A stretch of 64,000 nucleotides of DNA, from positions 208,394 to 272,393 of the IMG/VR virus record IMGVR_UViG_3300024308_000016; one strand, written 5' to 3'. The position numbers were made by a program, and so were the translations under genes. The notes below the pieces were generated by a model. That model worked only from the letters and a program-made list of their open reading frames with translations, did no database searches and had not been told where the DNA came from. This document shows positions 20,965 through 56,554 of this stretch, piece by piece. Every line of letters begins with the position of its first letter. Position 1 is the stretch's first letter.

Positions 20965-23900
20965 TCAAAGCACTCGCCGGTTATCAAAGGATGAGGTCGA
21001 CGCTTCCGCAAACTTCGGTGTCTTGTACACCGGAGCGACGGGTTGCGGGGCCTCGGGCTTGGCGCCTCCTTGTTCAACCATGACTTGTCCCAGTCCGGTC
21101 AGTGCCTGACTCATGCCCTGCAGTATCGGAACGATCTGCGTGACAAGCGTCTCACTGATGGTGGCTACGTACTTATTGGAGTCATTGCCGATTTGGACCA
21201 GCTCATCGATGCCTTGGCTATTTTGGCCCTTGGCGATGGCGGTCAGTGCGGGATCAGGTCTTGCCATGGAGGGGACAGTGATCCGACGCTCAGCTGCTGC
21301 CGAAGCTTTAGCTGGTGCGGCGCTCGCTGTACTCACCGTCCGCATAGCGGAGCTGGGTACATTGAACGACGCGGTCGTGGTAGCGGTAGGTGTCGATCGA
21401 TCAGCGTCAGCCGCCACAGCCTTGCCGGTAGTGTTACCTACCTTGGGGCCTCCCATGCCCTTAGGGGCGTAGGGAATGTTGAACTGCTGTGCCTTGTTCT
21501 CGATCTTGTTTTCGATGCGGTCGTACATCTCCGAGGTGGTCAGAGGACGATTGTTCGCATAGAACAGTTTGGCGTTGATGGGGTTGGCCGCTGCCTTTTG
21601 GAAGAGGCTGGCTGCCGGTGTATCGGGAGAGGCACTGAAGAACTTCCTGGCTCCGCCCAGACCCAGGTAGTGGGCCATGTAGCCGTCAGTGAAGTCGGGG
21701 TTTGGACGTACAGACTCCAAACCCTTCAGATTTTGCTTCAGATACTCCGCACCCATCAAGGTGTTGGCTCTTGGATCAGTGCGATCTTCGTTGCCCTTCA
21801 AGCCGTACTTGGAGCCGGTCTTGCGCATGGTGTCGTTCCATGCAGCGGGGAAGAACTGGTTCAAGCCGACCGCATTGCCAGCTTTGGCAGCGGGGTTCAT
21901 ACTCGACTCCATCGCGCTCATCAAGAGCATGTCGTTGGGATTGACGCCTGCTTCCTTGGCAGCGGAGGTGATGGTGCCTCGGATGCCTTGCTCTGCAGGT
22001 TTTCCACCACCCACAGATTCGGAAGGACGGGTTTCTCCGTCTTCGGCAAGTTTGCCCTTGTCAGTGTCGATCTTAGCACTTGGCTTGTAGGCCACTTGCT
22101 GCGTGCCCGAGGAGAACTTGTCTGGAGCGCCAGTGGTGGCGATCGCAGCCGCTGTAGGCGCTTGAGCCTGAGCGGTCATGCTCTTTTCCTCGGTGACTCC
22201 GGTCTTGGCCTTGATGCCTTGGTCCGCCTGGCTTGCAGTCTCGCCTGGAACCTGGGGCATTTTCAGATCGTTGATCGGAGAAGCTCCCTTGACCGCTGGG
22301 TCAGTGACAGTAGCACCGCCCTTGGCGTTGTACAGGTCACGAGCGAGCTTGGGGTTGCGGGTGCCGAGCTTGGAACCCTTGATAGAGCCTTGGCCTCCGC
22401 CTCCTCGTCCCAGCGACGACTGGATCGCAATGTCCGCATAACTCTTGTCGGTTTTGGCCAGTTTCTCCGAGCCTTGGTAGCCGGCTGCTTCGATGTGCCA
22501 CGTCTCTCCGCCCACAGGGCGAGTGAAGCCGTACTTGCGAAGCAATCCCATCTGCTCGAGTTCTTCCAGTTGGACGCTGGAGACGTCAAGCGCCAGGCCA
22601 TGCTCGTGCATGGAGTTGCCGGGCTTGGCTGCCTTGGCTGGGTTTTGTCGGTGAAGCGCTGCTTGTCTTTGATAGCTTCGGAAAGCCTCATTGACTTGCA
22701 AGCTTTTGCCAGTGGCCTCCCCATACTCCTGGGCCATAGACAAGAAGTGCTTGAGCAGGCGCGGTTGCATCCCTTCCAGGACGGCGTCCTTGCCCAACTT
22801 CACGTACTTCATGCCGCCGGAGCCATCCGCCATTTGACCACCCGCCAGTGCAGGCACCTTGGTCATCCCGGTGGAGGAGTCCGAGCCATCGGCCTGGCCA
22901 TTGGAGATGATGGTGGAGTTTTGGGTCTTGGACTGGGGAGGATCCTCAGGAGTGGCCACATCGAAGGGCTTGGCACTCGGAGCTTTGTTGAGCTCTCCGA
23001 CTTGCTTGGACTCCACCGCAGGGGTGTTGGGGATCGCCTCACTCTTGATCTGATCGCCAGCCGCCACGATGACTGCCTTGGCATTCTTCTTGTCAGCTCC
23101 CTTAGGATCGATCTCCCCAGCTTTGATCGCCGCTTTGACGCTCTTTTGCTGCTCCAGTCCCAGCGTCTTGATCTTGGCGTTGACCAGATTGAACGCAGGC
23201 TGGACGTTCGTGTTCAGAGAGTTCAGTCCCTTGAACGGAGAAACCGTCACGTCGTAGGGGCCCGACTCGAACGCTGCCTTGGACAGGTATTCGAGCTTTT
23301 GTTCGGGCTTGAGCTTGTCGAGTTCATCGAGCTTGACCTTCATGTCCACCTGAGCCAAGATAGCCAGGTGGTGCAAGAATACGGGTTTGAATCGCTGGTC
23401 GATCCACTCCGTCAGGTTCTGAACCATCTGCGACTCCTTGGGATCGATGGAGAAGATCTCCAAGATGTCCTTGGTGTCGATGGCACGCTCGTTGATGTAG
23501 GGCTGCTTGCCACGGTATCCGATACGGCCGTCCAGCAGGTACTTCTCCAGGCCCATGACCTGGCTGTTGTACATCTCGGTAGCGTCAGTGCCGTCCAGAC
23601 CGTACTGGATCACGCGGATGCGTTGCCAATCGTCGAGTCGGTTGCGGGTGAGGTACTTGTACAGCTTGTAGCCGCCATAAGCGGTTCCAGCCACAGCAGC
23701 GGCGCCGAGCACGACCGGAGAAGTGAGAACAGCCGCCAGCGAAGTGGCTGCGGCTCCCAAAGCGCCGATGATAGCACCGCCGGAACCACCAGCTGCCAGA
23801 CCTACGGTCATAGCTGCACGAGCTGCGAAGCCACCGAAGCGGGCAACAGAGGCTGCACCTGGCAGTCGGGCCAACAGACCACCACCTGCCTTAGCGGCAC

Positions 23901-26900
23901 CCGCCAAAGGTGTGCCCACTGTCCGAAAAGCTGTCGGGATCTTGCTCAGACCGGAGCCGAGCAAGCTCGCGCCTCCCATCAAGCCGCGACCGAGCAGTCC
24001 AGCTCCGCCTTTGAGGCCGCGACCCAGCAAGGAACCCGCGCCCTTGAGCAGTCCGCCCTTTCCACCCAGACCAAGCAATCCTATCGCCCCACTCATGATA
24101 GAGCCAGCGGCTGATGCGATAGTACCCATCATGCCGGTAGCCATCTTAAAGATGGTACTGAGCATGTCTGAGCCTTCCATGTACTTGTTCTTCTCCAGCC
24201 CTGCTTCGGACTTTTGCTGGGCTTCGAGCTTGCGCTGCTCATTGGCTTGGCGCATGTCTTCGTTTTGTTGCATGCGGTCAGCAGCTCCGCCATCGCGCTG
24301 TCCATCACCGTCTCGGTCGTTGAACTGGCCCGTAGCCTTGCGGTACGCCTTCATAGCGCGTTGCTTGGCTTTGTTGACCATGTTGCGCATGCCGGAGCCA
24401 GACTCTTGAGAAGTCTCCTCCTGAGCGGGGCCTTGCTGCTGATTGCCGGCTTGGTCCTTATTGCCGGAGAACATACCAGACAAGAAACCTGCACCCTTGG
24501 CCAAACTTCCACCCAGACCTCCGAGCAATCCTGCTCCACGACCGAGCAAGCCTCCCAGACGACCTCCGCGTTTAGCGCCCAGGCCTGCGACCCTGGAGCC
24601 AGCCTTAGAGGCCATAGAGCCGATACCGCCGATGGCGCCCGGAAGCATAGAGGCGACACCTCCGAGCAATCCACCCAAGTTGCCACCAGCGTACTTGTTC
24701 ATGATACGCTGGCCAGTCGGGATCTGGGGACCTAGATCCACGCCAGATGGGAACATGGGACCTACGAAGTCGTCCGTTCCAGGCTGAGGAGCCGAGCCAA
24801 ACATCTTGGCCCAGTCTTTCATCTTCTTGATGGTGCTGGAGTTGGCAGCTCCCGTGGTCTTGTCCTTGAGGAAGTCCCCGATACGAGCGCCTTGACCCAA
24901 GATAGAGTCCACGATCTTGGAGTCTTTGCCCACCAAGCTGATGTCCCGGATCTGAGTGAGCAGCGAGCGGTTGGTCTTGTCGACCGAGTCGTCCGATACT
25001 TCCTCAGGTGTCGCCGCCTGCATGGGCTTGGCCCCTGTGCGGTTCAAGATAGAACGCACGCGTCGACCACCCTTGCCCATTGCCAGGAGATCCCGGATCT
25101 GTTCGAGCACTTCTGTGGGCTTTTGCCAGCAGGTGCAGTCTCCGCCGGCTTGGAGCTGGGGAAGAGCTTGCAGTGCCTTGGAGACAGACTCTCCGATAGA
25201 TGCCGACAGCTCTCCCATACGCTCCTTCGACGATGCCCACATTGCGGCCATCCCTTCAGCGGAGTTTTGCCACGCTTGTCCAGCCATGGCTTTACCGTCT
25301 TCGTACATCTGGCCCGCGCCCTGCACTCCGTGCTGGTACATGCTCTTGGCTTTACCGCCGAAGGACTTGGCTCTATCGCGAGCGAAGTCATACGCCTTGG
25401 ATGCGCCGCTCATGAGCATGCCTGCAGCTCCTCGGCCCCGAGTGAACGCCTCGCCGGCCTTCTTCTTGATCCAGTCCAGCGCTTGGCGGGTCAAGGTACG
25501 CACAGGCTTGCCGTCTGCAGTAAACAGGCCGTCGACCATGTCGTCGATCGTCAGAACCACCTTGCCGTGGTGATCGATCACGTTGCCGGAGATGCGCGAC
25601 AGGTCCTCCAAGTTCTTGATGGGCTTTCCGGTGCTCTCGTCCTTGTAAGCACCGAGCTCCATGAGCTTGGCGCGCAACACCGGTGCGGGATTGCCCGGCA
25701 TGTACACGTCCTGGGGACCGTTGACCAAGTTGATAGCCATGCCCTTGGCCTTATCGAGCATCATCCGTGCGGTCTTGACGGTGGCGGGCACCTTTTGGAA
25801 CAACACGTCAGAACCAAAATCCACAGCTCTGCGAGTAGCGTTGACCGCTGCCTCGTAGACGCTGGACATCAGATTCTTGGCAGGCTCCTTAGCTGCTCCA
25901 GCAGCCGACTTGCCCATATCCCACCCAGGCATGATCACCTTGTCCTTGAGCCAAGATGCCGTATCGATGGTGGTGCCTGTGAGTTTGGCAGCACCAGCAG
26001 CGGCTGCGTTGACCACACCAGCGATCAGGTTACCCATCAGGCCTTGGCCCTTCAGACCAAACCCGCGGGAAGCCATAGAACCGCCTTCTTGACCGCCCTC
26101 GCCCCCAAAGCCCATGAAACCACCGCCCTTGGCTTGTTGGGCGGAGATCTTCTTGACTTGCTCATCGATACTCTTGAGGTATTGAACGCCTTCTGAACCC
26201 ACACCACTGTCGAACTTCTCACCCAGCGCCTTGATGGCGGCGAGCATGTGACCTTGGGCCGAGATCGGATCGATGGAGGTGCCCCCTGGTGCTGTCTCCT
26301 CTCCCAGATTTCGGTTCACGTCCTGAGCCATAGGACCGAAGTGCGTGGACTTGCCCAATCCCGCAGCTGCTTTGTAGTTCCAGCTGTAGTTGTCAGTGTT
26401 CATGATCCCCTTCAGGCTAGCTGTGGGGTTCTTGGGTGCGTAGGAGCGGATGTTCTCCTTTTGGGTCTGGTCAGACGTCATCCGGCCGCCTTGGTCGATG
26501 AGCTTGTAGTACTCATCTTCCACGATCTCGTAGTTGCCGTCCTTGTCACGCTTCAAGAAGCCCGCTTCCACCAGTCCTTCAGCATTGCCGTCAGCGATGG
26601 CTTGCTGGATAACGCCTCGGTGGTCCTTCACAGAGCTTCTGAGCTCCGAAGACCGGGACGTGAGCGAATACTTGCGGGTCAGCGCCTCCAGGGAGTCGCC
26701 GCTGTAGTTGGTCTGCAAGATCTTCCTGACCGTTTCCTGGGCTGAAGGGCTCAGGTTGCGGAACTCCACGGTGTCCATCATCCGGTCACCGTCATAGTCG
26801 AAGTTGCGCCTGCGGCTCAACTTGCCCAGATAGTCCTTTACTTCGTCTCGGTCCGCGTCTGGAACAGTGGCACCCTTGGTGAAGTCGTCGTAGGTCTCAT

Positions 26901-28476
26901 TCAGGCGATCCTTGTAACTGGACTCAGATGCTGCCTTCTTGATACCCATCAAGATGTCCGAGGACAGCTCGCGTTGGGTCTTGAACTTGCCGGTGTTGGG
27001 ATCGTACACAGTCAGTGCCGTGGAGGTGTCTCCAGTGCGCAGCACGGTGATCTCTCGCAAGATGCGGGCCAAGTAGCCTGGGATCACATCGACCTGCGCG
27101 CGAGCCACTCTCTTGGCGGTGTACAGGGCATCTTCCCCTTCTCCCCCGATGCCAGAGTTCTTGATAGTCATATCCGGCGTTTGATCACCGAAGATATCCA
27201 TCAGGCCTTCGAGCATCTCTCGGATAAGACCAGAGGGACCTCCCGCGTAGCCGAAGTCCTGGAACTTGTCAGAGCGTTTGATCCGATCGATCAGACCGCC
27301 GGGGTTGTGCCCATAGCGGCCAGCCAGCATGGAGGCGCGCATGATGTTGGGGTTCTTCTCGGCAAGGGCTTTCAAGCGCTTGGAGACGTTCTTGCTCACC
27401 CACTCACCAGCGGCAGCCCCCACGCCAGAGCCCACTGTGCGCCACCCCGAGTGCTTTTCCCCGGTGATCTCCGCCATGTCCCGGGCCATTTCGTTTTCGG
27501 AGATGATGTTCTCCAGCATGTCATCGACCAAGGAGATGTTGTCCTTGAAGTCGTCCATCTGCTCTTTGATCTTGGCTCGGATCTTCTTGCTGGCGTTGGC
27601 GATTCGGTCGGTGGTACCAAACAGGCTGTCCTGGATCGCGCCGAACGCCTTGTTCTTGGCGATGTTGGAGAAACGCTCGGTTTCCTTGATCTTGGCAGCA
27701 TCCGGCAGTCCGGTATTCTTCAAGATCCCAGCACCCGTGGTCTCAGCGACCTTGCGGTACTCGTTGAAGCTCTTGACCAGCGAGGCCATAGCGAAGTAGC
27801 TCCGGTACTGCAGCTCAAGCGACTTCTTTTGGAAGTTCATGTTGAACGTCTGCTGGTAATCCCGGATGCTGTTGACACCGACGGCGATCTGCTGCTGGAC
27901 CTTAAACGAAGTGTTGAAGCGCTTGGTGTCGATCTTGTCGCTCAAGATCTTGCGGGCCTCATCCTCGACGCGATCTTCCTCGGTCTGAGCCATCATGCGC
28001 CCAAACGTCTCACCCAGCATACGCTCCACGCCCTGGTCCACCGCATCGGTGTTGTCCCAGTCGGTCTTGCGCGAGCCGCTCAGGGAGTCCGCCAGTGCCT
28101 TGGTCGTTTGCTTCAGACGCGTGGCCGAATCAGGTACGAGCTTGTCGATCTTTCTCATGATGGAAGCCAGCTGAGGCTTGACTTCCGAGATAGATTGATC
28201 GTATAGACGCGAGGCATCTGACGTGATCTGATCCGTCGCCTCCCATGCTTTGCCGATGCCCTCGGGCAATGCGTCACGCGCTATCTGCGTATAGGTGGAG
28301 GGATCAGTGAACTTGTTACGCATGCTGGTCTTGACGCCTTCGAGGACGTGGTCGACTGGCTTGCGGTCGCGCTTGGGGCGCTCATCAGGGAAGTCTCCCC
28401 CGGAATAATCAAAGTCAAGATCCCGATCAAATTCGAAATCCCCGTAATCATTACGGTTATCATCACGAGTCGCCAT
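20965..28476 (-). CDS. Tail tape-measure/virion lysin (phiKZ gp181-like, 2503 aa) with M15 peptidase and lytic transglycosylase domains
   Basis: Very long helical, Gly/Ala-rich ORF; EAFRSYQRQ...PGNSMHEHGLALDV...ETWHIE (M15) at ~22480-22810; SAMESSMNP...GLNQF...YMAHYLG (SLT) at ~21500-21990. Confidence 0.88.
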   Translation of the reverse strand: MATRDDNRNDYGDFEFDRDLDFDYSGGDFPDERPKRDRKPVDHVLEGVKTSMRNKFTDPSTYTQIARDALPEGIGKAWEATDQITSDASRLYDQSISEVKPQLASIMRKIDKLVPDSATRLKQTTKALADSLSGSRKTDWDNTDAVDQGVERMLGETFGRMMAQTEEDRVEDEARKILSDKIDTKRFNTSFKVQQQIAVGVNSIRDYQQTFNMNFQKKSLELQYRSYFAMASLVKSFNEYRKVAETTGAGILKNTGLPDAAKIKETERFSNIAKNKAFGAIQDSLFGTTDRIANASKKIRAKIKEQMDDFKDNISLVDDMLENIISENEMARDMAEITGEKHSGWRTVGSGVGAAAGEWVSKNVSKRLKALAEKNPNIMRASMLAGRYGHNPGGLIDRIKRSDKFQDFGYAGGPSGLIREMLEGLMDIFGDQTPDMTIKNSGIGGEGEDALYTAKRVARAQVDVIPGYLARILREITVLRTGDTSTALTVYDPNTGKFKTQRELSSDILMGIKKAASESSYKDRLNETYDDFTKGATVPDADRDEVKDYLGKLSRRRNFDYDGDRMMDTVEFRNLSPSAQETVRKILQTNYSGDSLEALTRKYSLTSRSSELRSSVKDHRGVIQQAIADGNAEGLVEAGFLKRDKDGNYEIVEDEYYKLIDQGGRMTSDQTQKENIRSYAPKNPTASLKGIMNTDNYSWNYKAAAGLGKSTHFGPMAQDVNRNLGEETAPGGTSIDPISAQGHMLAAIKALGEKFDSGVGSEGVQYLKSIDEQVKKISAQQAKGGGFMGFGGEGGQEGGSMASRGFGLKGQGLMGNLIAGVVNAAAAGAAKLTGTTIDTASWLKDKVIMPGWDMGKSAAGAAKEPAKNLMSSVYEAAVNATRRAVDFGSDVLFQKVPATVKTARMMLDKAKGMAINLVNGPQDVYMPGNPAPVLRAKLMELGAYKDESTGKPIKNLEDLSRISGNVIDHHGKVVLTIDDMVDGLFTADGKPVRTLTRQALDWIKKKAGEAFTRGRGAAGMLMSGASKAYDFARDRAKSFGGKAKSMYQHGVQGAGQMYEDGKAMAGQAWQNSAEGMAAMWASSKERMGELSASIGESVSKALQALPQLQAGGDCTCWQKPTEVLEQIRDLLAMGKGGRRVRSILNRTGAKPMQAATPEEVSDDSVDKTNRSLLTQIRDISLVGKDSKIVDSILGQGARIGDFLKDKTTGAANSSTIKKMKDWAKMFGSAPQPGTDDFVGPMFPSGVDLGPQIPTGQRIMNKYAGGNLGGLLGGVASMLPGAIGGIGSMASKAGSRVAGLGAKRGGRLGGLLGRGAGLLGGLGGSLAKGAGFLSGMFSGNKDQAGNQQQGPAQEETSQESGSGMRNMVNKAKQRAMKAYRKATGQFNDRDGDGQRDGGAADRMQQNEDMRQANEQRKLEAQQKSEAGLEKNKYMEGSDMLSTIFKMATGMMGTIASAAGSIMSGAIGLLGLGGKGGLLKGAGSLLGRGLKGGAGLLGRGLMGGASLLGSGLSKIPTAFRTVGTPLAGAAKAGGGLLARLPGAASVARFGGFAARAAMTVGLAAGGSGGAIIGALGAAATSLAAVLTSPVVLGAAAVAGTAYGGYKLYKYLTRNRLDDWQRIRVIQYGLDGTDATEMYNSQVMGLEKYLLDGRIGYRGKQPYINERAIDTKDILEIFSIDPKESQMVQNLTEWIDQRFKPVFLHHLAILAQVDMKVKLDELDKLKPEQKLEYLSKAAFESGPYDVTVSPFKGLNSLNTNVQPAFNLVNAKIKTLGLEQQKSVKAAIKAGEIDPKGADKKNAKAVIVAAGDQIKSEAIPNTPAVESKQVGELNKAPSAKPFDVATPEDPPQSKTQNSTIISNGQADGSDSSTGMTKVPALAGGQMADGSGGMKYVKLGKDAVLEGMQPRLLKHFLSMAQEYGEATGKSLQVNEAFRSYQRQAALHRQNPAKAAKPGNSMHEHGLALDVSSVQLEELEQMGLLRKYGFTRPVGGETWHIEAAGYQGSEKLAKTDKSYADIAIQSSLGRGGGGQGSIKGSKLGTRNPKLARDLYNAKGGATVTDPAVKGASPINDLKMPQVPGETASQADQGIKAKTGVTEEKSMTAQAQAPTAAAIATTGAPDKFSSGTQQVAYKPSAKIDTDKGKLAEDGETRPSESVGGGKPAEQGIRGTITSAAKEAGVNPNDMLLMSAMESSMNPAAKAGNAVGLNQFFPAAWNDTMRKTGSKYGLKGNEDRTDPRANTLMGAEYLKQNLKGLESVRPNPDFTDGYMAHYLGLGGARKFFSASPDTPAASLFQKAAANPINAKLFYANNRPLTTSEMYDRIENKIENKAQQFNIPYAPKGMGGPKVGNTTGKAVAADADRSTPTATTTASFNVPSSAMRTVSTASAAPAKASAAAERRITVPSMARPDPALTAIAKGQNSQGIDELVQIGNDSNKYVATISETLVTQIVPILQGMSQALTGLGQVMVEQGGAKPEAPQPVAPVYKTPKFAEASTSSFDNRRVL

Positions 28477-28532
28477 AGTGCGAACCCTTTCTTTTATTAT
28501 GCGGACCAAAAAACACTCAAAGGATCACAGCC

Positions 28533-50558: not shown

Positions 50559-50597
50559 ACCCCGGTTCCCCTTCTCTTTATATAGAAAGCATTTGAA

Positions 50598-52049
50598 ATG
50601 ACAGCATCGAACAACGCAGCCGACAACAATAACAACGCATCCGCTGGCGGTGGCAGCCTGAGCGATTTCCGATCCTCCATGCTCAGCAAGCTGGGTGTGA
50701 CGGCTGCTCCGAAGTACGAACGTCGTGGCCCCAACCAGCATGAAATGCTGGACGACACGATCCGTGAGCTCAATGGCGAATTTCGTGCCAAGATGGCCCG
50801 CGTACTGGAAGACTCCGGCGTCTTCACCCGCGTCACCTATCCCGAGGGGCTCAATGCCCGTGAAGTGGCCGCTGATGTCAGCTTCGAATCCCGCATCGCC
50901 TCCATCAAGGGCTTCCAATCGGTGCGCGACTTCATGATCTTCTACCCCCGTATCCAGGGCGACATCGAAGACATCATCAAGTGCAACGCCATGCTCGATG
51001 GCCTGAGCCCGGTGATCGGCCGCACCAATGGCCTGAGCAAGTCCATGACGCTCAAGGACCAGACCTCCATCAACGAGCTGGTGCTCGATCTGCATGAAGC
51101 TGGCTTCTACGGCGTGCACGACAGCGACGACGTGATGGCGTTCGATGAAAAGAACATCCCCACGTTCCGTGCCGGCATCTCGTTCACTCGCAAGGGCAAC
51201 CTGGGCACTCAGTCCATGGAAGTGTCCGTGCGCTGGGCGGCCAACAACGAGCTGGTGGAAAAGTTCATCCGCATCGTCCGCAACCACGTGGCCGTCTCCG
51301 GTGCCATTGACGCTGGCGTTTACGACACCATCATCGGCATCACCGGCGGCAAGATGGACATCAAGAGCGAGTCCCTGCAGGACTCCCAGGAAGCGGTGCC
51401 TGCGTTCTACCCCTGGATGAACGAGACGGACATCGCCCAGTACTTCCTGGACTTCCTGAACTCTTCGGCCAACGTGCTGATCCTGTACGGCCCTCCCGGC
51501 ACCGGCAAGACCACCATGATCCGTACGGCCGTCAAGCGCCTGGGCCTTCGCGCTCTGGGCACTGCTGATCAGACCCTGATGAGCATGCCTGGCTTCGTGC
51601 AGATCTGCGGCACCCACATGTCGGGCGGCGGCGAAAACGGCAAGTACGATGTGCTGGTGGCCGAGGACTCGGAAATCCTCACCAAGAAGCGCCTCAACGA
51701 AGAAGGCCAGGTGGTCAACCCGGTGATGGCATCGCTGCTCAATGCGGTCGACGGCGTCTCCAAGGAAACCAGCTTCAAGCTGGTGATCACCACCAACCTT
51801 CCCAACCTGCTGGACATGGACACGGCACTACTGCGCCCTGGCCGCTGCTTCGACGTGATGGAATTCGGCCGCCTGACGGCTGAGCAAGGCATGACCATCC
51901 GCGCCATGCTGGGCAAGGAAAACAAGCGCCTGGCAAGCCCGAACGGCTACCTGCTGGCCGAGATCCTGAACATGGACACCACCAAGAGCGAACTGATCGA
52001 CGGTCACGCCATCGTCTCGCCCCGCTTCCCGCTGCCCAAGAAGAAGTAA
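50598..52049 (+). CDS. AAA+ ATPase paralogue 1 (BCS1-like C-terminal domain)
   Basis: GPPGTGKT, DVLVAEDSE, ITTN, DTALLRPGRCFD. Confidence 0.9.
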   Translation: MTASNNAADNNNNASAGGGSLSDFRSSMLSKLGVTAAPKYERRGPNQHEMLDDTIRELNGEFRAKMARVLEDSGVFTRVTYPEGLNAREVAADVSFESRIASIKGFQSVRDFMIFYPRIQGDIEDIIKCNAMLDGLSPVIGRTNGLSKSMTLKDQTSINELVLDLHEAGFYGVHDSDDVMAFDEKNIPTFRAGISFTRKGNLGTQSMEVSVRWAANNELVEKFIRIVRNHVAVSGAIDAGVYDTIIGITGGKMDIKSESLQDSQEAVPAFYPWMNETDIAQYFLDFLNSSANVLILYGPPGTGKTTMIRTAVKRLGLRALGTADQTLMSMPGFVQICGTHMSGGGENGKYDVLVAEDSEILTKKRLNEEGQVVNPVMASLLNAVDGVSKETSFKLVITTNLPNLLDMDTALLRPGRCFDVMEFGRLTAEQGMTIRAMLGKENKRLASPNGYLLAEILNMDTTKSELIDGHAIVSPRFPLPKKK

Positions 52050-52066
52050 GTTCTTCTATCCCTCCA

Positions 52067-52103
52067 CTTCCTGCGGCCCTTCGGGGCTGCGGGAAGGTCT
52101 TTT
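52067..52103 (+). terminator. Intrinsic terminator between AAA paralogues 1 and 2
   Basis: CTTCCTGCGGCCC-TTCG-GGGCTGCGGGAAG then TCTTTTGT. Confidence 0.7.
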
Positions 52104-52143
52104 GTCAGTTTCCCTTTTAAATAGTAAGCATTAGGAGCTACCC

Positions 52144-53805
52144 ATGTCCGAGAACAACAACCCCGAATCCACCAACCCCGCGTCCGAGCAACCCGCTCCC
52201 ATCATCGCCACTCCCGTCTACGAACAAACCGAAGTGACCATGGGCGCGGACGGCGAAGGCGCCACTGAATCTGCTGGTGAAGAAGCTGGTGAAGCGGCTG
52301 AAGCTGTCGCCTCAGCCTCTCCCTCTGTCGAGATGCTGAATCTTGAGCTTCCTGACCTCACCACCAAGAGTTTCGTGAAACGCATGATGGGCAACTCCAT
52401 GGTCGGCTTGATGTCGTCCTCCATGCTGGAGGCGTTGCGGTCCCAGTCGCCGGTGGCCGCTCGCGTGGCCTCCCGCAACCGTGTCAAGTCGGTGCGCCAG
52501 GCATTCGAGGAAGCCGTGGAAACGGTCGACAAGGTGCACTACTGCCGCGCCCGCTTCAAGCACACCATGGACTACATGGCGATCACGAACCCGAGTGGGA
52601 TCATGGATCTGGGCGAGTTCTACGACAAGAAGGGCAAGTACCAAGAGCGCCTGATGCTCGCCCGTGCTCGGGAAGTGGGCTTTGCCTCCATCCATCGCGC
52701 CATCTCCTTCACTGAGAGCTTCGGTATGCTGGAGAAGATCTGCGACCAGATGTCGATGTACGATGGCGCGGGTAAGACGTTCGATCGTCGCCTGGGCATG
52801 AACCAGATCCACCTAAAGCCCAATGCTCGTATCGAGATCGTGCAAGCGTTCATCGACGAAGGCTGGGTCTTTGTGGGTGGTGACACCATCTGCAAGTTTG
52901 ACGAAAAGAACCGTCCCATCGGCGGCATCAACTTCGACTGGCATGGCGGCTCTGAAGGTGGCGAATGCTACTCCAACACCCCGACGGTCTGGGGTATCGG
53001 TGAAAACCACATGCCTCGCCTGATCGAGCTGTTCCGTGAACGCCTGGCAGAGCGCACTCTGGGCACGGCCAAGCTGACCACCATCCAGGCCATCAACCCG
53101 ATGAGCGGTCTGGAGACAGTGGATGACGATCTGTCCGACGTGCGTCTGGCCGACTCCACGTTCTTCCCCTGGATGAACGGCACGCCGATCACCGAGTACT
53201 TCATGGACTTCCTGACCAGCGACGCCAACGTCCTGATCCTGTACGGCCCTCCGGGCACGGCAAAGTCGACCATGATCCGTACCGCGGTCAAGCAGCTGGG
53301 TCTGCGTGCCCTGGGCACGTCCAACCAAAAGCTGATCGGAAACCCGCAGTTCCTGACTGCATGCGGCTCTCGCATGTCCGGCCGTGGCGGCGACGCTCCG
53401 TACGACGTGCTGATCGCTGAAGACGCGGAAATCCTGGTGCGCAGCCGCGACCTGGGCAACCCGCTGATGTCCACGCTGCTGGACGTCACCAACGGCATGA
53501 GCGCCAAGCACTCGTTCAAGTTGATCCTGACCATGAACTCGGACAACCTCAACGACGTGGACACGGCGCTGCTGCGCCCTGGCCGGTGCTTCGACATCAT
53601 GCACTTCGGCTACCTGGACGCCAAGCAAGCAGCCAACGTGCGCACCGCACTGAAGCTGCCTGAGGTGCCGATCAAGGAAGGCAAGTACGTGCTGGCTGAA
53701 GTCGTCAACATGGGCATCATCAAGACCGACCTGATCGAAGGCAAGGCCATCGTCAAGCCGCGTTTCCCGCTGCCCAACGATCGCGTGATCGATCGTTCGC
53801 TGTAA
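52144..53805 (+). CDS. AAA+ ATPase paralogue 2
   Basis: GPPGTAKS, DVLIAEDAE, DTALLRPGRCFD; acidic disordered N-terminus. Confidence 0.9.
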   Translation: MSENNNPESTNPASEQPAPIIATPVYEQTEVTMGADGEGATESAGEEAGEAAEAVASASPSVEMLNLELPDLTTKSFVKRMMGNSMVGLMSSSMLEALRSQSPVAARVASRNRVKSVRQAFEEAVETVDKVHYCRARFKHTMDYMAITNPSGIMDLGEFYDKKGKYQERLMLARAREVGFASIHRAISFTESFGMLEKICDQMSMYDGAGKTFDRRLGMNQIHLKPNARIEIVQAFIDEGWVFVGGDTICKFDEKNRPIGGINFDWHGGSEGGECYSNTPTVWGIGENHMPRLIELFRERLAERTLGTAKLTTIQAINPMSGLETVDDDLSDVRLADSTFFPWMNGTPITEYFMDFLTSDANVLILYGPPGTAKSTMIRTAVKQLGLRALGTSNQKLIGNPQFLTACGSRMSGRGGDAPYDVLIAEDAEILVRSRDLGNPLMSTLLDVTNGMSAKHSFKLILTMNSDNLNDVDTALLRPGRCFDIMHFGYLDAKQAANVRTALKLPEVPIKEGKYVLAEVVNMGIIKTDLIEGKAIVKPRFPLPNDRVIDRSL

Positions 53806-53812
53806 AGCGCTA

Positions 53813-53841
53813 CTCCACGGGCCCTTTACGGGCCCGTGGAG
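53813..53841 (+). terminator. Hairpin between AAA paralogues 2 and 3
   Basis: CTCCACGGGCCC-TTTAC-GGGCCCGTGGAG. Confidence 0.65.
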
Positions 53842-53896
53842 GTGTTTGCATTTTCAATAATCAGTATTCTCTCCCTTCTCTATTAGAAAGCGTCAC

Positions 53897-55309
53897 ATGT
53901 CCGCAGTTCCTACCCCTGAAAACTTCGCAACTACCCTGCTGAGCGCCGCCGCTACTGCCATCCGCCAGCGCCAAAGCGCCGCCGGCAGCCGCATCCTGAA
54001 CCGCTCCAAGCCCAGGACGGTGGTCGAACGCTTCGACTACACCGTTGATGTGGCCATGAAGAAGGCCGGTGCCTTCGAGGACATCCCCCAGCCTCCCCAC
54101 CACGACCGCGGCGACTCCGTCACGTCGGTGGTCCTGAACCGCGATTTCTACTGCGGCGAAGGCCGCCTGCTGATGGACTCCTTCATCAGCCAGGTGATCG
54201 CCGCTGATGGCTTCCGTAGCTCTCTGGACCTCATGGTCATGGACCTGGGCTACGGCGGCATGCTGGACATCGCTCGCGCCAACATGCAGACCTACTACGA
54301 CCAGCTGCCCGTGAAGGGGGGCTTCTGTGCCGGCAACATGTACGTCAAGGAAGGCGGTGAGCGCGCTCTGTTTGAAGCCTTCGTCAAGCGTGGCTGGCGC
54401 ATCATGAACCATGATCACCTGGTGCTGCTGGATCATCGCAACCTCCCGATCGCTGGCGTGGACCTGGACCTGTGCCGTGACCGTCACCACGACGTGTACA
54501 TGGACGACATCCAGTTCTTCGGTCTGAGCACCGCTGTGCTCGACGAGATCACGGGCATCCTGCGCTCGGTGCTGGCGGACCGCATGATGGGCAACGCCTC
54601 CATGACCACGATCCAGTCCATCGACAAGCGCGGCGAGATGCAGACGTCCACGGATGACATGTCCGAAGGCCTGACGGCTACGAGCGCCTTCTATCCCCAG
54701 ATGGAGGGCGCCTCGATCCGTGAGTACTTCATGGACTTCTTCAACTCCAAGGCGTCGGTGCTGGTCCTGTACGGCCCTCCCGGCACTGCTAAGTCGACCA
54801 TGATTCGCACAGCCATCATCGAGCTGGGCCTGCGTGCACTGGGCACTTCCAACCCCAGCGTGTACGCCAGTCCCAATTTCATCTCGGTGTGCGGCTCCCG
54901 TATGGCGGGCGCCAACGGTGAGACGCCCTTCGACGTGCTGATCACGGAAGATGCGGAAGCTCTGGTGGCTCCTCGCTCGGCAGGCAACGCCAAGATGGCT
55001 GAGCTGCTCGATGCCACCGACGGCATCGGCACTCAGCACAAGTTCAAGATGATCATCACTTTGAACTCGCGCGATCTGTCGAACGTGGACACAGCACTGC
55101 TGCGCCCTGGCCGTTGCTTCGACATCATGGAGTTCGGCCATCTCACGGCCGAAGAAGCCATGGTGGTGCGGCGCACTCTGGATCTGCCCGAGATCGCCAT
55201 CAAGCCCGGCAAGTACCTGCTGGCCGAGGTGGTGAACATGGACGACACCAAGAGCGAGACCATCGACGGCCATGCCATCGTGACTCCGCGCTTCAAGCTC
55301 AAGAAGTAA
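53897..55309 (+). CDS. AAA+ ATPase paralogue 3
   Basis: GPPGTAKS, DVLITEDAE, DTALLRPGRCFD. Confidence 0.9.
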   Translation: MSAVPTPENFATTLLSAAATAIRQRQSAAGSRILNRSKPRTVVERFDYTVDVAMKKAGAFEDIPQPPHHDRGDSVTSVVLNRDFYCGEGRLLMDSFISQVIAADGFRSSLDLMVMDLGYGGMLDIARANMQTYYDQLPVKGGFCAGNMYVKEGGERALFEAFVKRGWRIMNHDHLVLLDHRNLPIAGVDLDLCRDRHHDVYMDDIQFFGLSTAVLDEITGILRSVLADRMMGNASMTTIQSIDKRGEMQTSTDDMSEGLTATSAFYPQMEGASIREYFMDFFNSKASVLVLYGPPGTAKSTMIRTAIIELGLRALGTSNPSVYASPNFISVCGSRMAGANGETPFDVLITEDAEALVAPRSAGNAKMAELLDATDGIGTQHKFKMIITLNSRDLSNVDTALLRPGRCFDIMEFGHLTAEEAMVVRRTLDLPEIAIKPGKYLLAEVVNMDDTKSETIDGHAIVTPRFKLKK

Positions 55310-55332
55310 GCCGCGTCCCGTGGTAAAACAGT

Positions 55333-55370
55333 AAGAGGAGCCGGCATCTGCTGGCTCCTCTTATTTTTTT
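55333..55370 (+). terminator. Intrinsic terminator
   Basis: AAGAGGAGCCGGC-ATCT-GCTGGCTCCTCTT then a T tract. Confidence 0.8.
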
Positions 55371-55393
55371 GTCTCTATTGAAAGGATATCATC

Positions 55394-56176
55394 GTGAACA
55401 AGAACCAAGTAACCGCTATCGGGCGTTTCATCCAAGGCAGACTTCAGTTTTCGGAACTGCTCAACACAGCAGCTCGATTCATAGAAGCACAGAGCTGGAT
55501 CAACCAGTCCGGCGAGCTGGACAAGGGTATTGGCAAGCGCCGCACCAGCATGGCTGTCGCTGACTTGTTGAAAGCCACGCATCAGCCCCTGAATGTACAG
55601 GAGGTGCTGATCAACTATTACGCTGACCTGATAGTCACCTCCATCAACCTGGACATCGCGGCTAAGGAGCTGCAAATCACTGTCATCTTGTCTGACACCT
55701 CTGTCAGTGCCAAGGTGTCCCAGCAATACGTGTTGACCGTCACCGCGGGTACTTCGGCTGCTCAGCCCGATCCCGTTGCAATGGATCCCGCGGACTGGGC
55801 GCAGCATCCAGCCAATCGCGCAGATGCCCCGAAGAAGTCGCCAGCTCCCATTGCTCCTCCCGAAGCCGCTAAAAAGGCAGTCCAGGCCAAGGCACAGGTT
55901 ACGCTCCCTGTGGAGCAGCCTCCCCAGTTCCTGTATGCCGCCAAGGACAAGGTGCGCCAGTTGAGCACCCTGAATATGGCGCGTGTGCAGCCCTTCATCG
56001 AAGCAGCGAACTTTCCGATCGGCTACAAAGTGCATCGTGTCGTCTCCATCGATGGCCCGCTCAATGAAGGCATCGCTCGCATCGACGTGATCTCCACGTG
56101 GACAGGTCCCGGAAAAGGCCACCATTCCGAGATCCTTACTCCGCTGTACCTGAGCCAGCACCGCTTCTCCAAGTAA
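55394..56176 (+). CDS. Hypothetical two-domain protein with Pro/Ala/Lys linker (260 aa)
   Basis: GTG start after AAAGGA. Confidence 0.75.
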   Translation: MNKNQVTAIGRFIQGRLQFSELLNTAARFIEAQSWINQSGELDKGIGKRRTSMAVADLLKATHQPLNVQEVLINYYADLIVTSINLDIAAKELQITVILSDTSVSAKVSQQYVLTVTAGTSAAQPDPVAMDPADWAQHPANRADAPKKSPAPIAPPEAAKKAVQAKAQVTLPVEQPPQFLYAAKDKVRQLSTLNMARVQPFIEAANFPIGYKVHRVVSIDGPLNEGIARIDVISTWTGPGKGHHSEILTPLYLSQHRFSK

Positions 56177-56200
56177 CTGCTCCTTCTAAGGACCCCTAAA

Positions 56201-56554
56201 ATGAAAGCTACCGCATCCGCTTACTGCCGCATCGGCGTCTCCATCAACACCCTGCAAGAACTCACTGAAGCACTGACGGCTATTTCACAAGGGCGTAGTG
56301 ACCTGGAGATGGCCCGAGCTGTGGCCCATGCCGAGACGCTCGTGTATCGCCGCCTGGCTGATGTGCGCAAGGCGGGTGCGCGTATCATGCCGTTTCAGTC
56401 CCTGATCCCCAAAGAAGTGGTCTTCAGCATCGTGGAACAGGGGCCCAATTCGTTGCATTTCAAGATGGACAAGCACATGCGTACTTCCAGCAAGGGACAA
56501 GAGTCCCAGGAATCGATGTACAGCTTCGACATCATCATTACCCATCCCAACTAA
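56201..56554 (+). CDS. Hypothetical protein (117 aa)
   Basis: AAGGA SD. Confidence 0.75.
   Translation: MKATASAYCRIGVSINTLQELTEALTAISQGRSDLEMARAVAHAETLVYRRLADVRKAGARIMPFQSLIPKEVVFSIVEQGPNSLHFKMDKHMRTSSKGQESQESMYSFDIIITHPN

What the first reader, a model, noticed from the sequence alone, without database searches (positions are those of the whole stretch)
50598..55309. Three tandem BCS1-like AAA+ ATPases with a shared motor and diversified N-termini
Seen: three 470-553 aa paralogues, each followed by its own hairpin. All have F[YF]PxM..Y F.DF, Walker B hhhhED[SA]E and an identical DTALLRPGRCFD, and end in I[DE]G[HK]AIVxPRF. Walker A is GPPGTGKT in copy 1 and GPPGTAKS in copies 2 and 3. N-terminal halves are strongly diverged. 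Copies 1 and 3 share the leader CCCTTCTC...TAGAAAGC, implying whole-cassette duplication. Known: an ED-type Walker B with RPGR is typical of BCS1-like AAA proteins, which remodel or translocate folded substrates. Inference: a family of substrate-specific remodellers or a heterohexamer, perhaps disassembling host defence complexes or moving proteins at a phage compartment (speculative).
Basis: partly seen in the sequence, partly recalled or inferred. Interest (0 to 1): 0.66.

Follow-up and report, generated by a model that had tools for sequence, protein, structure and literature searches.

The report
Three tandem phage AAA ATPase paralogues
A phiKZ-like, shell-encoding jumbo phage carries three side-by-side copies of an uncharacterised ATP-driven protein-remodelling enzyme that keep the same motor but have very different, and in one case swapped, front ends, which suggests a set of early accessory machines aimed at different targets.

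Summary
They are the only PF00004 genes in a 272-kb phiKZ-like genome that also encodes chimallin and a PicA/Imp1 homologue.

They belong to a large, uncharacterised jumbo-phage family (PHROG 14322, phiKZ gp208). The family's hallmark is an ED Walker B, reported otherwise only for Bcs1 and YjoB. "BCS1-like" holds for the motor only. There is no BCS1_N domain and no membrane helix, and the N-domain has no solved relative.

The "shared leader" is a genome-wide AT-rich motif (about 45 sites). It is probably the phage's early promoter, so it is not evidence of cassette duplication. Local tandem duplication is supported instead by a relative with a single gene at the same locus.

All copies are under purifying selection. 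Paralogue N-domains are 15-24% identical and motors 50-62%. Copy 1 evolves evenly. Copies 2 and 3 are sisters with a derived GPPGTAKS P-loop and fast-evolving N-domains. The copy-2 N-domain was replaced wholesale between two near-identical phages.

Best reading: early-expressed accessory remodellers whose N-domains set specificity. A heterohexamer or a role at the phage nucleus remains untested.

The parts
50569..50594 (+). Gene-start motif (CCCTTCTCTTTATATAGAAAGC) 7 nt before the copy-1 ATG. It is one instance of the genome-wide AT-rich motif that is probably the early promoter.
   Evidence: PWM score 25.3; interpretation by analogy with PMC7598289
50598..51404 (+). Copy 1, N-terminal region (aa 1-269): low-complexity start, helices, then an alpha/beta domain. 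It evolves slowly (81% identical to the L006 orthologue).
51405..52049 (+). Copy 1, AAA motor (aa 270-483): FYPW, canonical Walker A GPPGTGKT, ED Walker B, sensor-1 TTN, RPGRCFD and a conserved C-terminal tail IDGHAIVSPRFPLPKKK.
52067..52106 (+). Terminator-like hairpin (13-bp stem) with a T-rich tail, after copy 1. Its fold is weakly supported (z -2.05).
52108..52133 (+). Gene-start motif (TTTTAAATAGTAAGC) before copy 2, followed by a separate AGGAG ribosome-binding site.
   Evidence: PWM score 26.0
52144..53160 (+). Copy 2, N-terminal region (aa 1-339): a long acidic low-complexity start plus the N-domain. It evolves fast (34% identical to the orthologue) and is exchanged as a cassette between close relatives.
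53161..53805 (+). Copy 2, AAA motor (aa 340-553) with the derived Walker A GPPGTAKS.
53813..53842 (+). GC-rich hairpin (12-bp stem) after copy 2, with a weak T-tract.
   Evidence: z -5.2
53870..53895 (+). Gene-start motif (CCCTTCTCTATTAGAAAGC) 5 nt before the copy-3 ATG.
   Evidence: PWM score 23.4
53897..54688 (+). Copy 3, N-terminal region (aa 1-264). The model has pLDDT 80: helices followed by an antiparallel beta-sheet/helix domain. It has no solved relative.
54689..55309 (+). Copy 3, AAA motor (aa 265-470) with the derived Walker A GPPGTAKS.
55330..55372 (+). Terminator-like hairpin (16-bp stem) plus T7 run, after copy 3.
   Evidence: z -6.7

Best explanation
The locus is a tandem array of three paralogous, soluble, single-module AAA ATPases. 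They belong to the jumbo-phage gp208 family, a branch of the classical AAA clade that shares the ED Walker B with Bcs1 and YjoB. The array arose by two local duplications of one ancestral gene that sat beside the terminase. Each copy is its own transcription unit, made of the phage's AT-rich gene-start motif (probably the early promoter read by the virion RNA polymerase), the gene and a hairpin terminator.

The inferred mechanism is as follows. Each protein forms an ATP-driven ring. Its conserved motor remodels, unfolds or moves a protein substrate that the variable N-terminal domain selects. Copy 1, with a canonical P-loop and an evenly conserved sequence, would serve a conserved target. Copies 2 and 3 are sister paralogues with a derived GPPGTAKS P-loop and fast-evolving N-domains, and the copy-2 N-domain is exchangeable as an allele. 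They would serve variable targets, most plausibly host factors such as defence or host-takeover targets.

Shown here: paralogy, motifs, purifying selection, N-versus-motor rate asymmetry, cassette replacement, and a conserved unit architecture. Inferred: ring assembly, ATPase activity of copies 2 and 3, early timing, and the nature of the substrates.
For: Family and motor. PF00004 scores above its cut-off in all three. PHROG 14322, which also holds phiKZ gp208, matches at E 1e-43 to 1e-45. VIA gives Z about 14 against classical AAA motors. ED Walker B occurs in 156 of 164 family members where the motif was found and is reported otherwise as a Bcs1/YjoB peculiarity. YjoB and Bcs1 are the top Foldseek hits for the full-length model.

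Duplication history. The triplet is syntenic in L006, L007 and L014. A more distant relative, L013, has a single gene at the same place next to the terminase. In the tree, copies 2 and 3 are sisters (SH-aLRT 97) and orthologues group together.

Selection. dN/dS is 0.00-0.17 in every part at strain level and 0.03-0.05 in the motors between L006 and L007.

N-versus-motor asymmetry. Identity to the L006 orthologue is 81/80% (N/motor) for copy 1, 34/80% for copy 2 and 43/75% for copy 3.

Cassette replacement. L006 and L007 are 90-100% identical in DNA through the flanks (87-93% in the copy-2 motor). About 800 nt of the copy-2 N-domain fall to 33-55% identity with sharp edges. dS there is 1.7 against 0.06-0.45 elsewhere. 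A third allele, P0008, is 76% and 46% identical in the N-domain to the other two, while the motors stay 94-97% identical.

Regulation. About 45 motif sites are found against 3-6 in shuffles, nearly all on the + strand, mostly 2-10 nt (up to 14) before an ATG. The motif-gene-hairpin units are conserved in L006. The motif fits the published description of jumbo-phage early promoters.

Accessory nature. phiKZ orf208 tolerates a transposon insertion, and its knock-down has no effect on plaque formation.
Against: No substrate, oligomeric state or ATPase activity is shown for any family member. The N-domain has no solved relative, so its binding role rests on analogy with other AAA N-domains. The G-to-A change in the P-loop of copies 2 and 3 may weaken nucleotide binding, which fits a mixed ring better than independent rings. 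dS between the window and L006 is near saturation, so those dN/dS values are unreliable. At strain level the copy-2 N-domain shows dN/dS 0.17, so there is no positive selection signal. Early timing is inferred from a motif alone. The RNA-library contigs that match copies 1 and 2 could be DNA carry-over.
Confidence: 0.55

Rival explanations
1. The three paralogues assemble into one hetero-oligomeric ring. Copy 1 would be the fully active subunit and copies 2 and 3 the catalytically weakened or regulatory subunits, as in Rpt1-6 or Pex1/Pex6. The different N-domains would together form one composite substrate-binding platform.
For: All three genes are kept together in every genome that has the array. 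They share the same gene-start motif and so probably the same timing. The P-loop variant GPPGTAKS is fixed in copies 2 and 3 and their orthologues, and is nearly absent elsewhere in the family (7 of 160). Asymmetric catalytic sites are typical of paralogous AAA hetero-rings (general knowledge).
Against: Most family members are single-copy, for example phiKZ, FLC9 and L013, so homo-oligomers are the ancestral state. The copy-2 N-domain was replaced while the N-domains of copies 1 and 3 stayed 98-100% identical, which argues against tight co-adapted contacts between N-domains. Copies 2 and 3 keep Walker B, sensor 1 and both SRH arginines. No complex prediction could separate homo- from hetero-rings with one job, so none was run on this question.
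Confidence: 0.2
2. The proteins act at the phage nucleus as Bcs1-like movers of folded proteins, or as assembly or disassembly factors for the chimallin shell or its import machinery.
For: The genome encodes chimallin (E 1e-46) and a homologue of phiKZ gp69, the importer imp1 (E 3e-30; imp1/orf69 named). The gp69 homologue carries a weaker copy of the same gene-start motif (site 120685). Bcs1, the closest mechanistic analogue, moves a folded protein across a barrier.
Against: The family is present in CBB and GAP32, where the chimallin profile finds nothing although it scores in three positive controls. phiKZ gp208 is listed as non-core and its knock-down does not reduce plaques. orf208 tolerates a transposon insertion, whereas the imp genes do not. 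The proteins have no membrane or shell-anchoring segment.
Confidence: 0.1
3. The proteins are unfoldases that dock on a host peptidase through their conserved, probably flexible C-terminal tail (PRF-x-L here, phi-G-F in most of the family). They would redirect that peptidase to substrates chosen by the N-domain.
For: The tail is the most conserved element outside the motor and has low model confidence (pLDDT under 50 at residues 463-483). A phi-G-[FLYW] motif lies in the last 9 residues of 101 of 169 family members. An aromatic-hydrophobic pair sits at the pore-loop-1 position (P-x-F-V/L/I). The resemblance to the HslU C-terminal tail and the ClpX IGF motif is recalled from memory, so it is a lead only.
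Against: Pore loop 1 lacks the canonical Ar-phi-Gly. The closest relatives, Bcs1 and YjoB, are not peptidase partners. In the window's proteins 2-9 extra residues follow the motif. The one complex job (3 x E. coli HslV plus the copy-3 tail) gave no answer and counts neither way. The host and its peptidases are unknown.
Confidence: 0.05
4. The copies are redundant recent duplicates, unexpressed or decaying.
For: None beyond the fact that the genes are duplicated.
Against: All frames are intact. Orthologous triplets are kept across phages whose motors differ by 20-25%. dN/dS is 0-0.17. The paralogues are deeply diverged, not recent. Each keeps its own start motif and terminator. Exact-match contigs occur in two RNA libraries (weak evidence).
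Confidence: 0.02

Closest known systems
phiKZ gp208 (PHIKZ208, 'AAA family ATPase', PHROG 14322) and its homologues in jumbo phages
   Same: They share the family profile (E 1e-43 to 1e-45 against 1.6e-182 for gp208 itself). They also share the [FY]YPW motif, ED Walker B, RPGRCF and a conserved C-terminal aromatic tail. Both occur in phiKZ-like phages.
   Different: gp208 is 366 aa with a short N-region of about 165 aa, and is single-copy. The window has three tandem copies with N-regions of 264-339 aa. The PHROG match covers only the motor. gp208 has no assigned function and is dispensable in the laboratory.
Bacillus subtilis YjoB (PDB 7W42), a cytoplasmic substrate-specific AAA chaperone
   Same: Both are soluble, with a single AAA module after an alpha/beta N-domain and an ED Walker B. 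YjoB is the best Foldseek hit for the full-length model (E 7e-11). VIA aligns it from model residue 234, which takes in the beta-hairpin ahead of the AAA core (Z 14.4).
   Different: The N-domain folded alone does not match the YjoB N-domain (Foldseek rank 31, E 0.46; absent from the VIA top 50). Sequence searches do not place YjoB among the best 60. YjoB is a bacterial stationary-phase protein, not a phage protein.
Mitochondrial Bcs1 (heptameric translocase of the folded Rieske protein)
   Same: It shares the ED Walker B, the N-domain-plus-single-AAA architecture, and Foldseek ranks 4-12 for the full-length model.
   Different: The phage proteins have no BCS1_N Pfam match and no membrane anchor. 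Their N-domain fold does not recover Bcs1. Ring size is unknown.
Afg2/Drg1, Cdc48/p97/VAT and proteasomal Rpt subunits (classical AAA unfoldases)
   Same: They are the best sequence matches among solved structures (per-domain scores about 40-56 bits). Motor fold similarity is equal (Z 13.6-14.7). They share the SRH with RPGR and the sensor-1 Asn.
   Different: Those proteins have a DE Walker B, a canonical Ar-phi-Gly pore loop 1 and different N-domains, and many have two AAA modules.
Paralogous AAA hetero-rings (Rpt1-6, Pex1/Pex6, Ycf2-FtsHi)
   Same: They involve several paralogues with a shared motor and unequal nucleotide sites. This is a conceptual parallel for the rival explanation.
   Different: No evidence here shows that the three co-assemble, and they are not orthologous to any of those subunits.

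Membership tests
Classical AAA clade / Pfam PF00004 | Profile match above the curated cut-off | tested here: met
   Scores are 48.6, 40.1 and 37.4 bits against a cut-off of 21.2. The genome scan confirms three matches.
Classical AAA clade / Pfam PF00004 | Walker A, Walker B, sensor-1 Asn, and second region of homology with two arginines | tested here: met
   Present are GPPGT[GA]K[TS], hhhhED, T-x-N at N400, and R413/R416 in ALLRPGR. Walker B is in ED order. The Walker A of copies 2 and 3 has Ala in place of the Gly before Lys.
Bcs1/YjoB-type branch of classical AAA | ED instead of DE in Walker B | tested here: met
   The motif reads AEDSE, AEDAE and TEDAE. ED occurs in 156 of 164 family members where the motif was found. 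The literature describes it as exceptional to YjoB and Bcs1 (PMC9565160).
Bcs1/YjoB-type branch of classical AAA | Closest solved relatives are Bcs1 or YjoB | tested here: inconclusive
   Foldseek on the full-length model puts YjoB and Bcs1 first (7e-11 to 3e-9, against about 1e-8 for p97 and Rpt). VIA Z-scores are tied across classical AAA proteins. Sequence searches rank Afg2, Cdc48 and Rpt first, with no Bcs1 or YjoB in the best 60.
Bcs1 (mitochondrial chaperone BCS1) | BCS1_N domain (PF08740) / Bcs1-specific N-domain fold | tested here: not met
   No Pfam hit at E up to 0.1. The N-domain model (pLDDT 80) has no Bcs1 or YjoB N-domain among the top VIA or Foldseek matches.
Bcs1 (mitochondrial chaperone BCS1) | N-terminal transmembrane anchor | tested here: not met
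   The maximum Kyte-Doolittle 19-residue hydropathy is 1.0-1.3 in the window's three proteins (up to 1.55 in the orthologues), below the usual 1.6 threshold.
Bcs1 (mitochondrial chaperone BCS1) | Heptameric ring with a substrate chamber | not testable with these tools
   The size limit of the complex tool (1000 residues) excludes a 6-7-mer, and no experiment is available.
Jumbo-phage gp208-like AAA family (PHROG 14322) | Profile match and the family motifs ([FY]YPW, ED, RPGRCF, C-terminal aromatic tail) | tested here: met
   E-values are 2.8e-45, 3e-44 and 1.5e-43 over profile positions about 200-389 of 398. The motifs appear in the family alignment. There are 1164 representatives at E 1e-30 or better.
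Chimallivirus nuclear import factors (Imp1/PicA and others) | Homology to a known importer, and essentiality | tested here: not met
   The gp69 homologue lies elsewhere in the genome. phiKZ orf208 tolerates an insertion whereas the imp genes do not.

The most novel reading that the evidence does not exclude
The array is a battery of early-expressed, Bcs1/YjoB-type remodelling rings. Their N-terminal recognition domains are swapped between phage strains as cassettes, much as receptor-binding proteins are swapped. This would let the phage dismantle, unfold or feed to a peptidase a changing set of host proteins such as defence complexes. On this reading the uncharacterised gp208 family would be a widespread, programmable counter-host machine of jumbo phages.
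Probability: 0.2. Interest if true: 0.7.

Novelty: new variant of a known kind. Interest (0 to 1): 0.45.

Why it matters
The gp208-type AAA ATPase is one of the most widespread unexplained proteins of jumbo phages. The family has 1164 representative clusters at E 1e-30 or better, yet no function is known, and in phiKZ it is dispensable in the laboratory. The array provides a natural experiment: one motor with three N-domains that evolve at very different rates, one of them exchanged as a cassette between otherwise near-identical phages. This points to the N-domain as the specificity element and to variable, probably host-side, targets. It also gives concrete constructs for substrate-trap experiments. 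Finally, it extends the rare ED-Walker-B (Bcs1/YjoB) type of AAA motor to a large viral family.

Tried and rejected
1. A near-identical DNA search of the phage collection found nothing. A viral-contig scan with copy 3 found no relative.

2. PADLOC and NCBIfam gave only generic P-loop matches below their cut-offs. The proteins are not a known defence or named bacterial family.

3. Sequence searches of the PDB with the motor, with the family profile and with the Walker-B-to-SRH segment never brought Bcs1 or YjoB into the best 60.

4. The N-domain model was searched in PDB by Foldseek, by VIA over all representatives, and by VIA over Foldseek's list. The best results were E 0.086 and Z 7.2 (adaptin appendage, KA1-like alpha+beta sandwiches), which lies within the tool's stated noise. 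The Atlas lead DUF5925 scored 0.80 and is not backed by Pfam.

5. The complex job (3 x HSLV_ECOLI plus residues 400-470 of copy 3) returned 'no answer' with score 0.00. It is not evidence for or against binding.

6. I ran no further search on homo- versus hetero-ring prediction. A pass between two homologous AAA motors would be expected under either hypothesis.

7. dN/dS between the window and L006 was computed, but dS (0.65-1.2) is near saturation. Even deep paralogues give dS of only 0.6-1.1 under this codon bias. These ratios are therefore not relied on.

8. The 'shared leader means cassette duplication' argument was rejected.

9. The dRNA-seq paper on phiKZ does not mention gene 208.

No alternative genetic code was needed.
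Full report
**Setting.** The window is the last 64 kb of a 272,393-bp virus record rated 100% complete. It is a distant phiKZ-like jumbo phage:
- The tail sheath carries the phiKZ_gp29PR domain, and its best isolate match is Burkholderia phage FLC9 at 40% identity.
- The window also holds split RNA polymerase beta subunits, an SbcC-like protein, RNase H, a UvsX-like recombinase, a 2514-aa tail-fibre/transglycosylase protein and the large terminase.
- Elsewhere the genome encodes a chimallin homologue (PHROG 4795, E 1e-46) and a homologue of phiKZ gp69 (E 3e-30), which a later paper names as the importer imp1.
- The phage therefore carries the two hallmark genes of the nucleus-forming group.

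**The observation.**
- Three intact + strand ORFs lie at 50598-52049, 52144-53805 and 53897-55309, encoding 483, 553 and 470 aa.
- The paralogues match each other at E 1e-74 to 1e-101, and they are the only PF00004 genes in the genome.
- N-terminal regions are 15-24% identical between paralogues, and motors are 50-62% identical.
- The N-regions are still alignable, with shared G-F-x-S, FDEKN-P and G-[IV]-x-F positions. They are diverged homologues, not unrelated domains.
- Each 3' gap holds a GC-rich hairpin. The folds after copies 2 and 3 are well supported (z -5.2 and -6.7). The gap after copy 1 is weaker (z -2.05; 7 of 200 shuffles fold as well).

**What the proteins are.**
- Pfam finds only the AAA core.
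- PHROGs places all three in family 14322, of unknown function. This is the family of phiKZ gp208, which itself scores E 1.6e-182.
- tblastn finds relatives in 135 phage records, all large genomes of about 267-378 kb in the rows listed.
- The exhaustive profile search finds 1164 representative clusters at E 1e-30 or better, many with a long N-region like these. I ran this costly search because the N-domain was left open by the word search and the family scans.
- Family hallmarks are a [FY]YPW motif about 28 residues before Walker A, an ED Walker B (156 of the 164 of 169 sampled members where the motif was found), RPGRCF, and a conserved aromatic C-terminal tail. The tail reads PRF-x-L here and phi-G-F in most members.
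- There is no membrane helix.

**Is it BCS1-like?**

In favour:
- The YjoB structure paper states that YjoB and Bcs1 [quoted passage not shown] (PMC9565160).
- Foldseek with the full-length copy-1 model (pLDDT 70) ranks YjoB first and Bcs1 in ranks 4-12, at 7e-11 to 3e-9. p97 and Rpt score about 1e-8.
- VIA aligns YjoB from model residue 234, which includes the beta-hairpin ahead of the AAA core.

Against:
- VIA Z-scores are tied across all classical AAA motors at 13.6-14.7.
- Three sequence searches of the PDB put Afg2, Cdc48 and Rpt first, and never list Bcs1 or YjoB in the best 60.
- There is no BCS1_N match.
- The copy-3 N-region was folded alone with a 65-sequence alignment (pLDDT 80, pTM 0.70). 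It has no significant solved relative: Foldseek's best E is 0.086, VIA's best Z is 7.2, and YjoB sits at rank 31 with E 0.46.
- Its only clear matches are the N-regions of other phage AAA proteins (RP12 at 6e-5, CBB at 7e-4; Atlas rows).

The motor is therefore Bcs1/YjoB-type by one sharp marker and a marginal fold preference. The proteins are not members of the Bcs1 family. Like YjoB, they are soluble.

**The shared leader.**
- The strings upstream of copies 1 and 3 are real, but they belong to a genome-wide motif, YYCTYAAATAGAAAGC.
- A weight matrix built from 22 seeds finds 48 sites scoring above 12, against 3-6 in shuffled genomes.
- Nearly all sites are on the + strand, and in most an ATG begins 2-10 nt (up to 14) beyond the scored window.
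- They concentrate in 1-121 kb of the genome and again at 259-266 kb, which includes all three AAA genes.
- Copy 2 has the motif too, followed by a separate AGGAG. This argues that the motif is not itself the ribosome-binding site.
- A review of jumbo-phage transcription states that each such phage has a phage-specific, roughly 10-nt AT-rich conserved motif upstream of early operons. That motif defines the early promoters read by the virion RNA polymerase, whereas middle and late promoters cannot be found bioinformatically (PMC7598289).
- By that analogy the three genes are predicted early genes, each with its own promoter and terminator. The same motif-gene-hairpin units are present in the relative L006.
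- The leader therefore says nothing about cassette duplication.

**Duplication history.**
- The triplet occurs in the same order and the same neighbourhood (DUF7193 protein, virion protein, two small ORFs, then AAA x 3, with the terminase downstream on the other strand) in a 182-kb contig, L006. It is also in a near-identical strain, L014.
- The 5.9-kb fragment L007 holds copies 1-3 and two downstream ORFs in the same order.
- A more distant relative, L013, has a single 493-aa gene at the equivalent place beside the terminase.
- In a quick maximum-likelihood tree of 129 motors, orthologues group together. Copies 2 and 3 are sisters (SH-aLRT 97). Copy 1 forms its own supported group. All lie in one clade with SH-aLRT 98.
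- The GPPGTAKS P-loop is confined to the copy-2/3 clade plus one other family member, so it arose once before copies 2 and 3 split.
- There were thus two local duplications, both older than the split between the window phage and L006. There is no sign of gene conversion: paralogue identities are the same within and between genomes.
- Multi-copy states also arose elsewhere. Klebsiella phage FBKp24 has three copies, two of them 1.2 kb apart. phiKZ and FLC9 have one each.

**Selection and the N-domains.**
- Against the near-identical strain L014, dN/dS is 0.00 for both halves of copy 1 and for the copy-2 motor. It is 0.17 for the copy-2 N-region (10 amino-acid changes), and 0.03 and 0.07 for the two halves of copy 3.
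- Between L006 and L007 the motors give 0.03-0.05.
- The genes are therefore maintained, not decaying.
- Rates differ sharply by part. Identity of the window proteins to their L006 orthologues is 81/80% (N/motor) for copy 1, 34/80% for copy 2 and 43/75% for copy 3.
- The most telling result concerns L006 and L007. They are 90-100% identical in DNA through copy 1, copy 3 and the flanks, and 87-93% in the copy-2 motor. An 800-nt stretch with sharp edges inside the copy-2 N-region drops to 33-55% identity.
- Synonymous divergence in that stretch is 1.7, against 0.06-0.45 around it. The stretch was therefore replaced by a divergent allele and did not evolve rapidly in place.
- The replaced part runs from about residue 47 to about 320. 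It stops just before the conserved beta-hairpin that belongs structurally to the motor.
- A third allele, P0008, is 76% and 46% identical to the other two in the N-region, with motors 94-97% identical.
- The N-domains of copies 1 and 3 stayed 98-100% identical through this exchange.

**Bearing on function.**
- Selecting substrates or adaptors is the usual role of AAA N-domains (introduction).
- An N-domain that can be exchanged alone behaves as an autonomous specificity module.
- Its allelic diversity suggests variable targets, while the evenly conserved copy 1 suggests a conserved one.
- phiKZ gp208 is listed as non-core, and its knock-down gives no loss of plaques and only a weak drop in chimallin level (PMC12571901).
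- A viable phiKZ with a transposon in orf208 was isolated, whereas the importer genes tolerate no disruptive insertions (PMC12676376).
- The family is present in CBB and GAP32, in which the chimallin profile finds nothing although it scores in phiKZ, FLC9 and FBKp24.
- Together these results make a core role at the phage nucleus unlikely and an accessory, host-directed role more likely.
- The aromatic-hydrophobic pair at the pore-loop-1 position (P-x-F-V/L/I, lacking the canonical Gly) leaves both threading and Bcs1/YjoB-style chamber mechanisms open.

**Occurrence and expression.**
- Near-identical sequence is found in subsurface, soil, invertebrate-gut, wastewater and other metagenomes from 12 studies.
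- One 61,987-bp contig spans the whole locus with 127 differences.
- Two RNA libraries hold short contigs that match exactly at 51631-52120 and 52368-52613. Further contigs at 52271-52394 and 52895-53020 carry 2-3 differences.
- The tool warns that DNA can be present in such libraries, so this is only a hint of transcription.

**Open points.**
- Homo- versus hetero-ring assembly could not be settled. The single complex job could not discriminate between them.
- I used that job instead on a speculative docking of the C-terminal tail to HslV, and it returned no answer.

Noticed in passing
whole genome (G000:C1), e.g. 1395, 5416, 5789, 5999, 43545, 52635, 92487, 107519; window 50583, 52122, 53884, 57767: A genome-wide motif YYCTYAAATAGAAAGC has about 45 sites against 3-6 in shuffles. 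Nearly all are on the + strand, a few nt before an ATG, and confined to 1-121 kb and 259-266 kb. It is probably this phage's early (virion RNA polymerase) promoter and would map its early regulon.
   Followed up: partly
G000:C1:34082-36022 and G000:C1:120716-122101 (outside the window): A chimallin homologue (PHROG 4795, E 1e-46) and a homologue of phiKZ gp69/imp1 (E 3e-30) are present. The gp69 homologue has a weaker copy of the gene-start motif at 120685.
   Followed up: partly
window 55310-56554 compared with L014: Strain-level mosaicism. Against a 97.5%-identical strain, divergence jumps from 0-1% (copy 1 and upstream) to 7% in the copy-3 motor and 9-14% in the next two ORFs and the gap (55394-56176, 56201-56554). 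This indicates a recombination boundary inside copy 3.
   Followed up: partly
C-termini of the three proteins (window 52005-52049, 53760-53805, 55270-55309) and the family alignment A3: The C-terminal tail is conserved and has low model confidence. It reads IV-x-PRF-x-L here and [RK]-phi-G-F at the very end in most of the family (101 of 169). From memory it resembles peptidase-docking tails or loops (HslU C-terminus, ClpX IGF). The one complex job gave no answer.
   Followed up: partly
window 53861-55273, - strand: A 470-aa antisense ORF mirrors copy 3 almost exactly, and similar long antisense ORFs overlie copies 1 and 2. The Pfam and PHROG matches are on the + strand. Such shadow ORFs are common in GC-rich coding DNA.
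   Followed up: no
Klebsiella phage FBKp24 NC_061421.1: 48766-49329, 50486-51100, 170737-171807: An isolated, cultivable chimallin-encoding phage carries three members of the same AAA family, two of them 1.2 kb apart. It could serve as a tractable model for paralogue function.
   Followed up: partly
window 50598-50660, 52144-52350; L006 and L007 copy-2 starts: Copies 1 and 2 begin with similar Asn/Ser/Pro/Glu-rich low-complexity peptides (MTASNN..., MSENNN..., MSDVNN...). In copy 2 the first 46 residues or so stay conserved between L006 and L007 even though the domain behind them was replaced.
   Followed up: no
window 20965-28509, - strand: A 2514-aa ORF combines a tail-fibre-type N-terminal part (PHROG 3201) with endolysin-like and transglycosylase regions. 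It probably encodes a phiKZ gp181-like cell-puncturing protein.
   Followed up: no
window 51631-52120, 52271-52613, 52895-53020: Short contigs from two RNA libraries (wastewater metatranscriptome, chicken-gut run) cover the 3' end of copy 1 and the 5' part of copy 2. Matches are exact at 51631-52120 and 52368-52613, with 2-3 differences in the other contigs. DNA carry-over is not excluded.
   Followed up: partly
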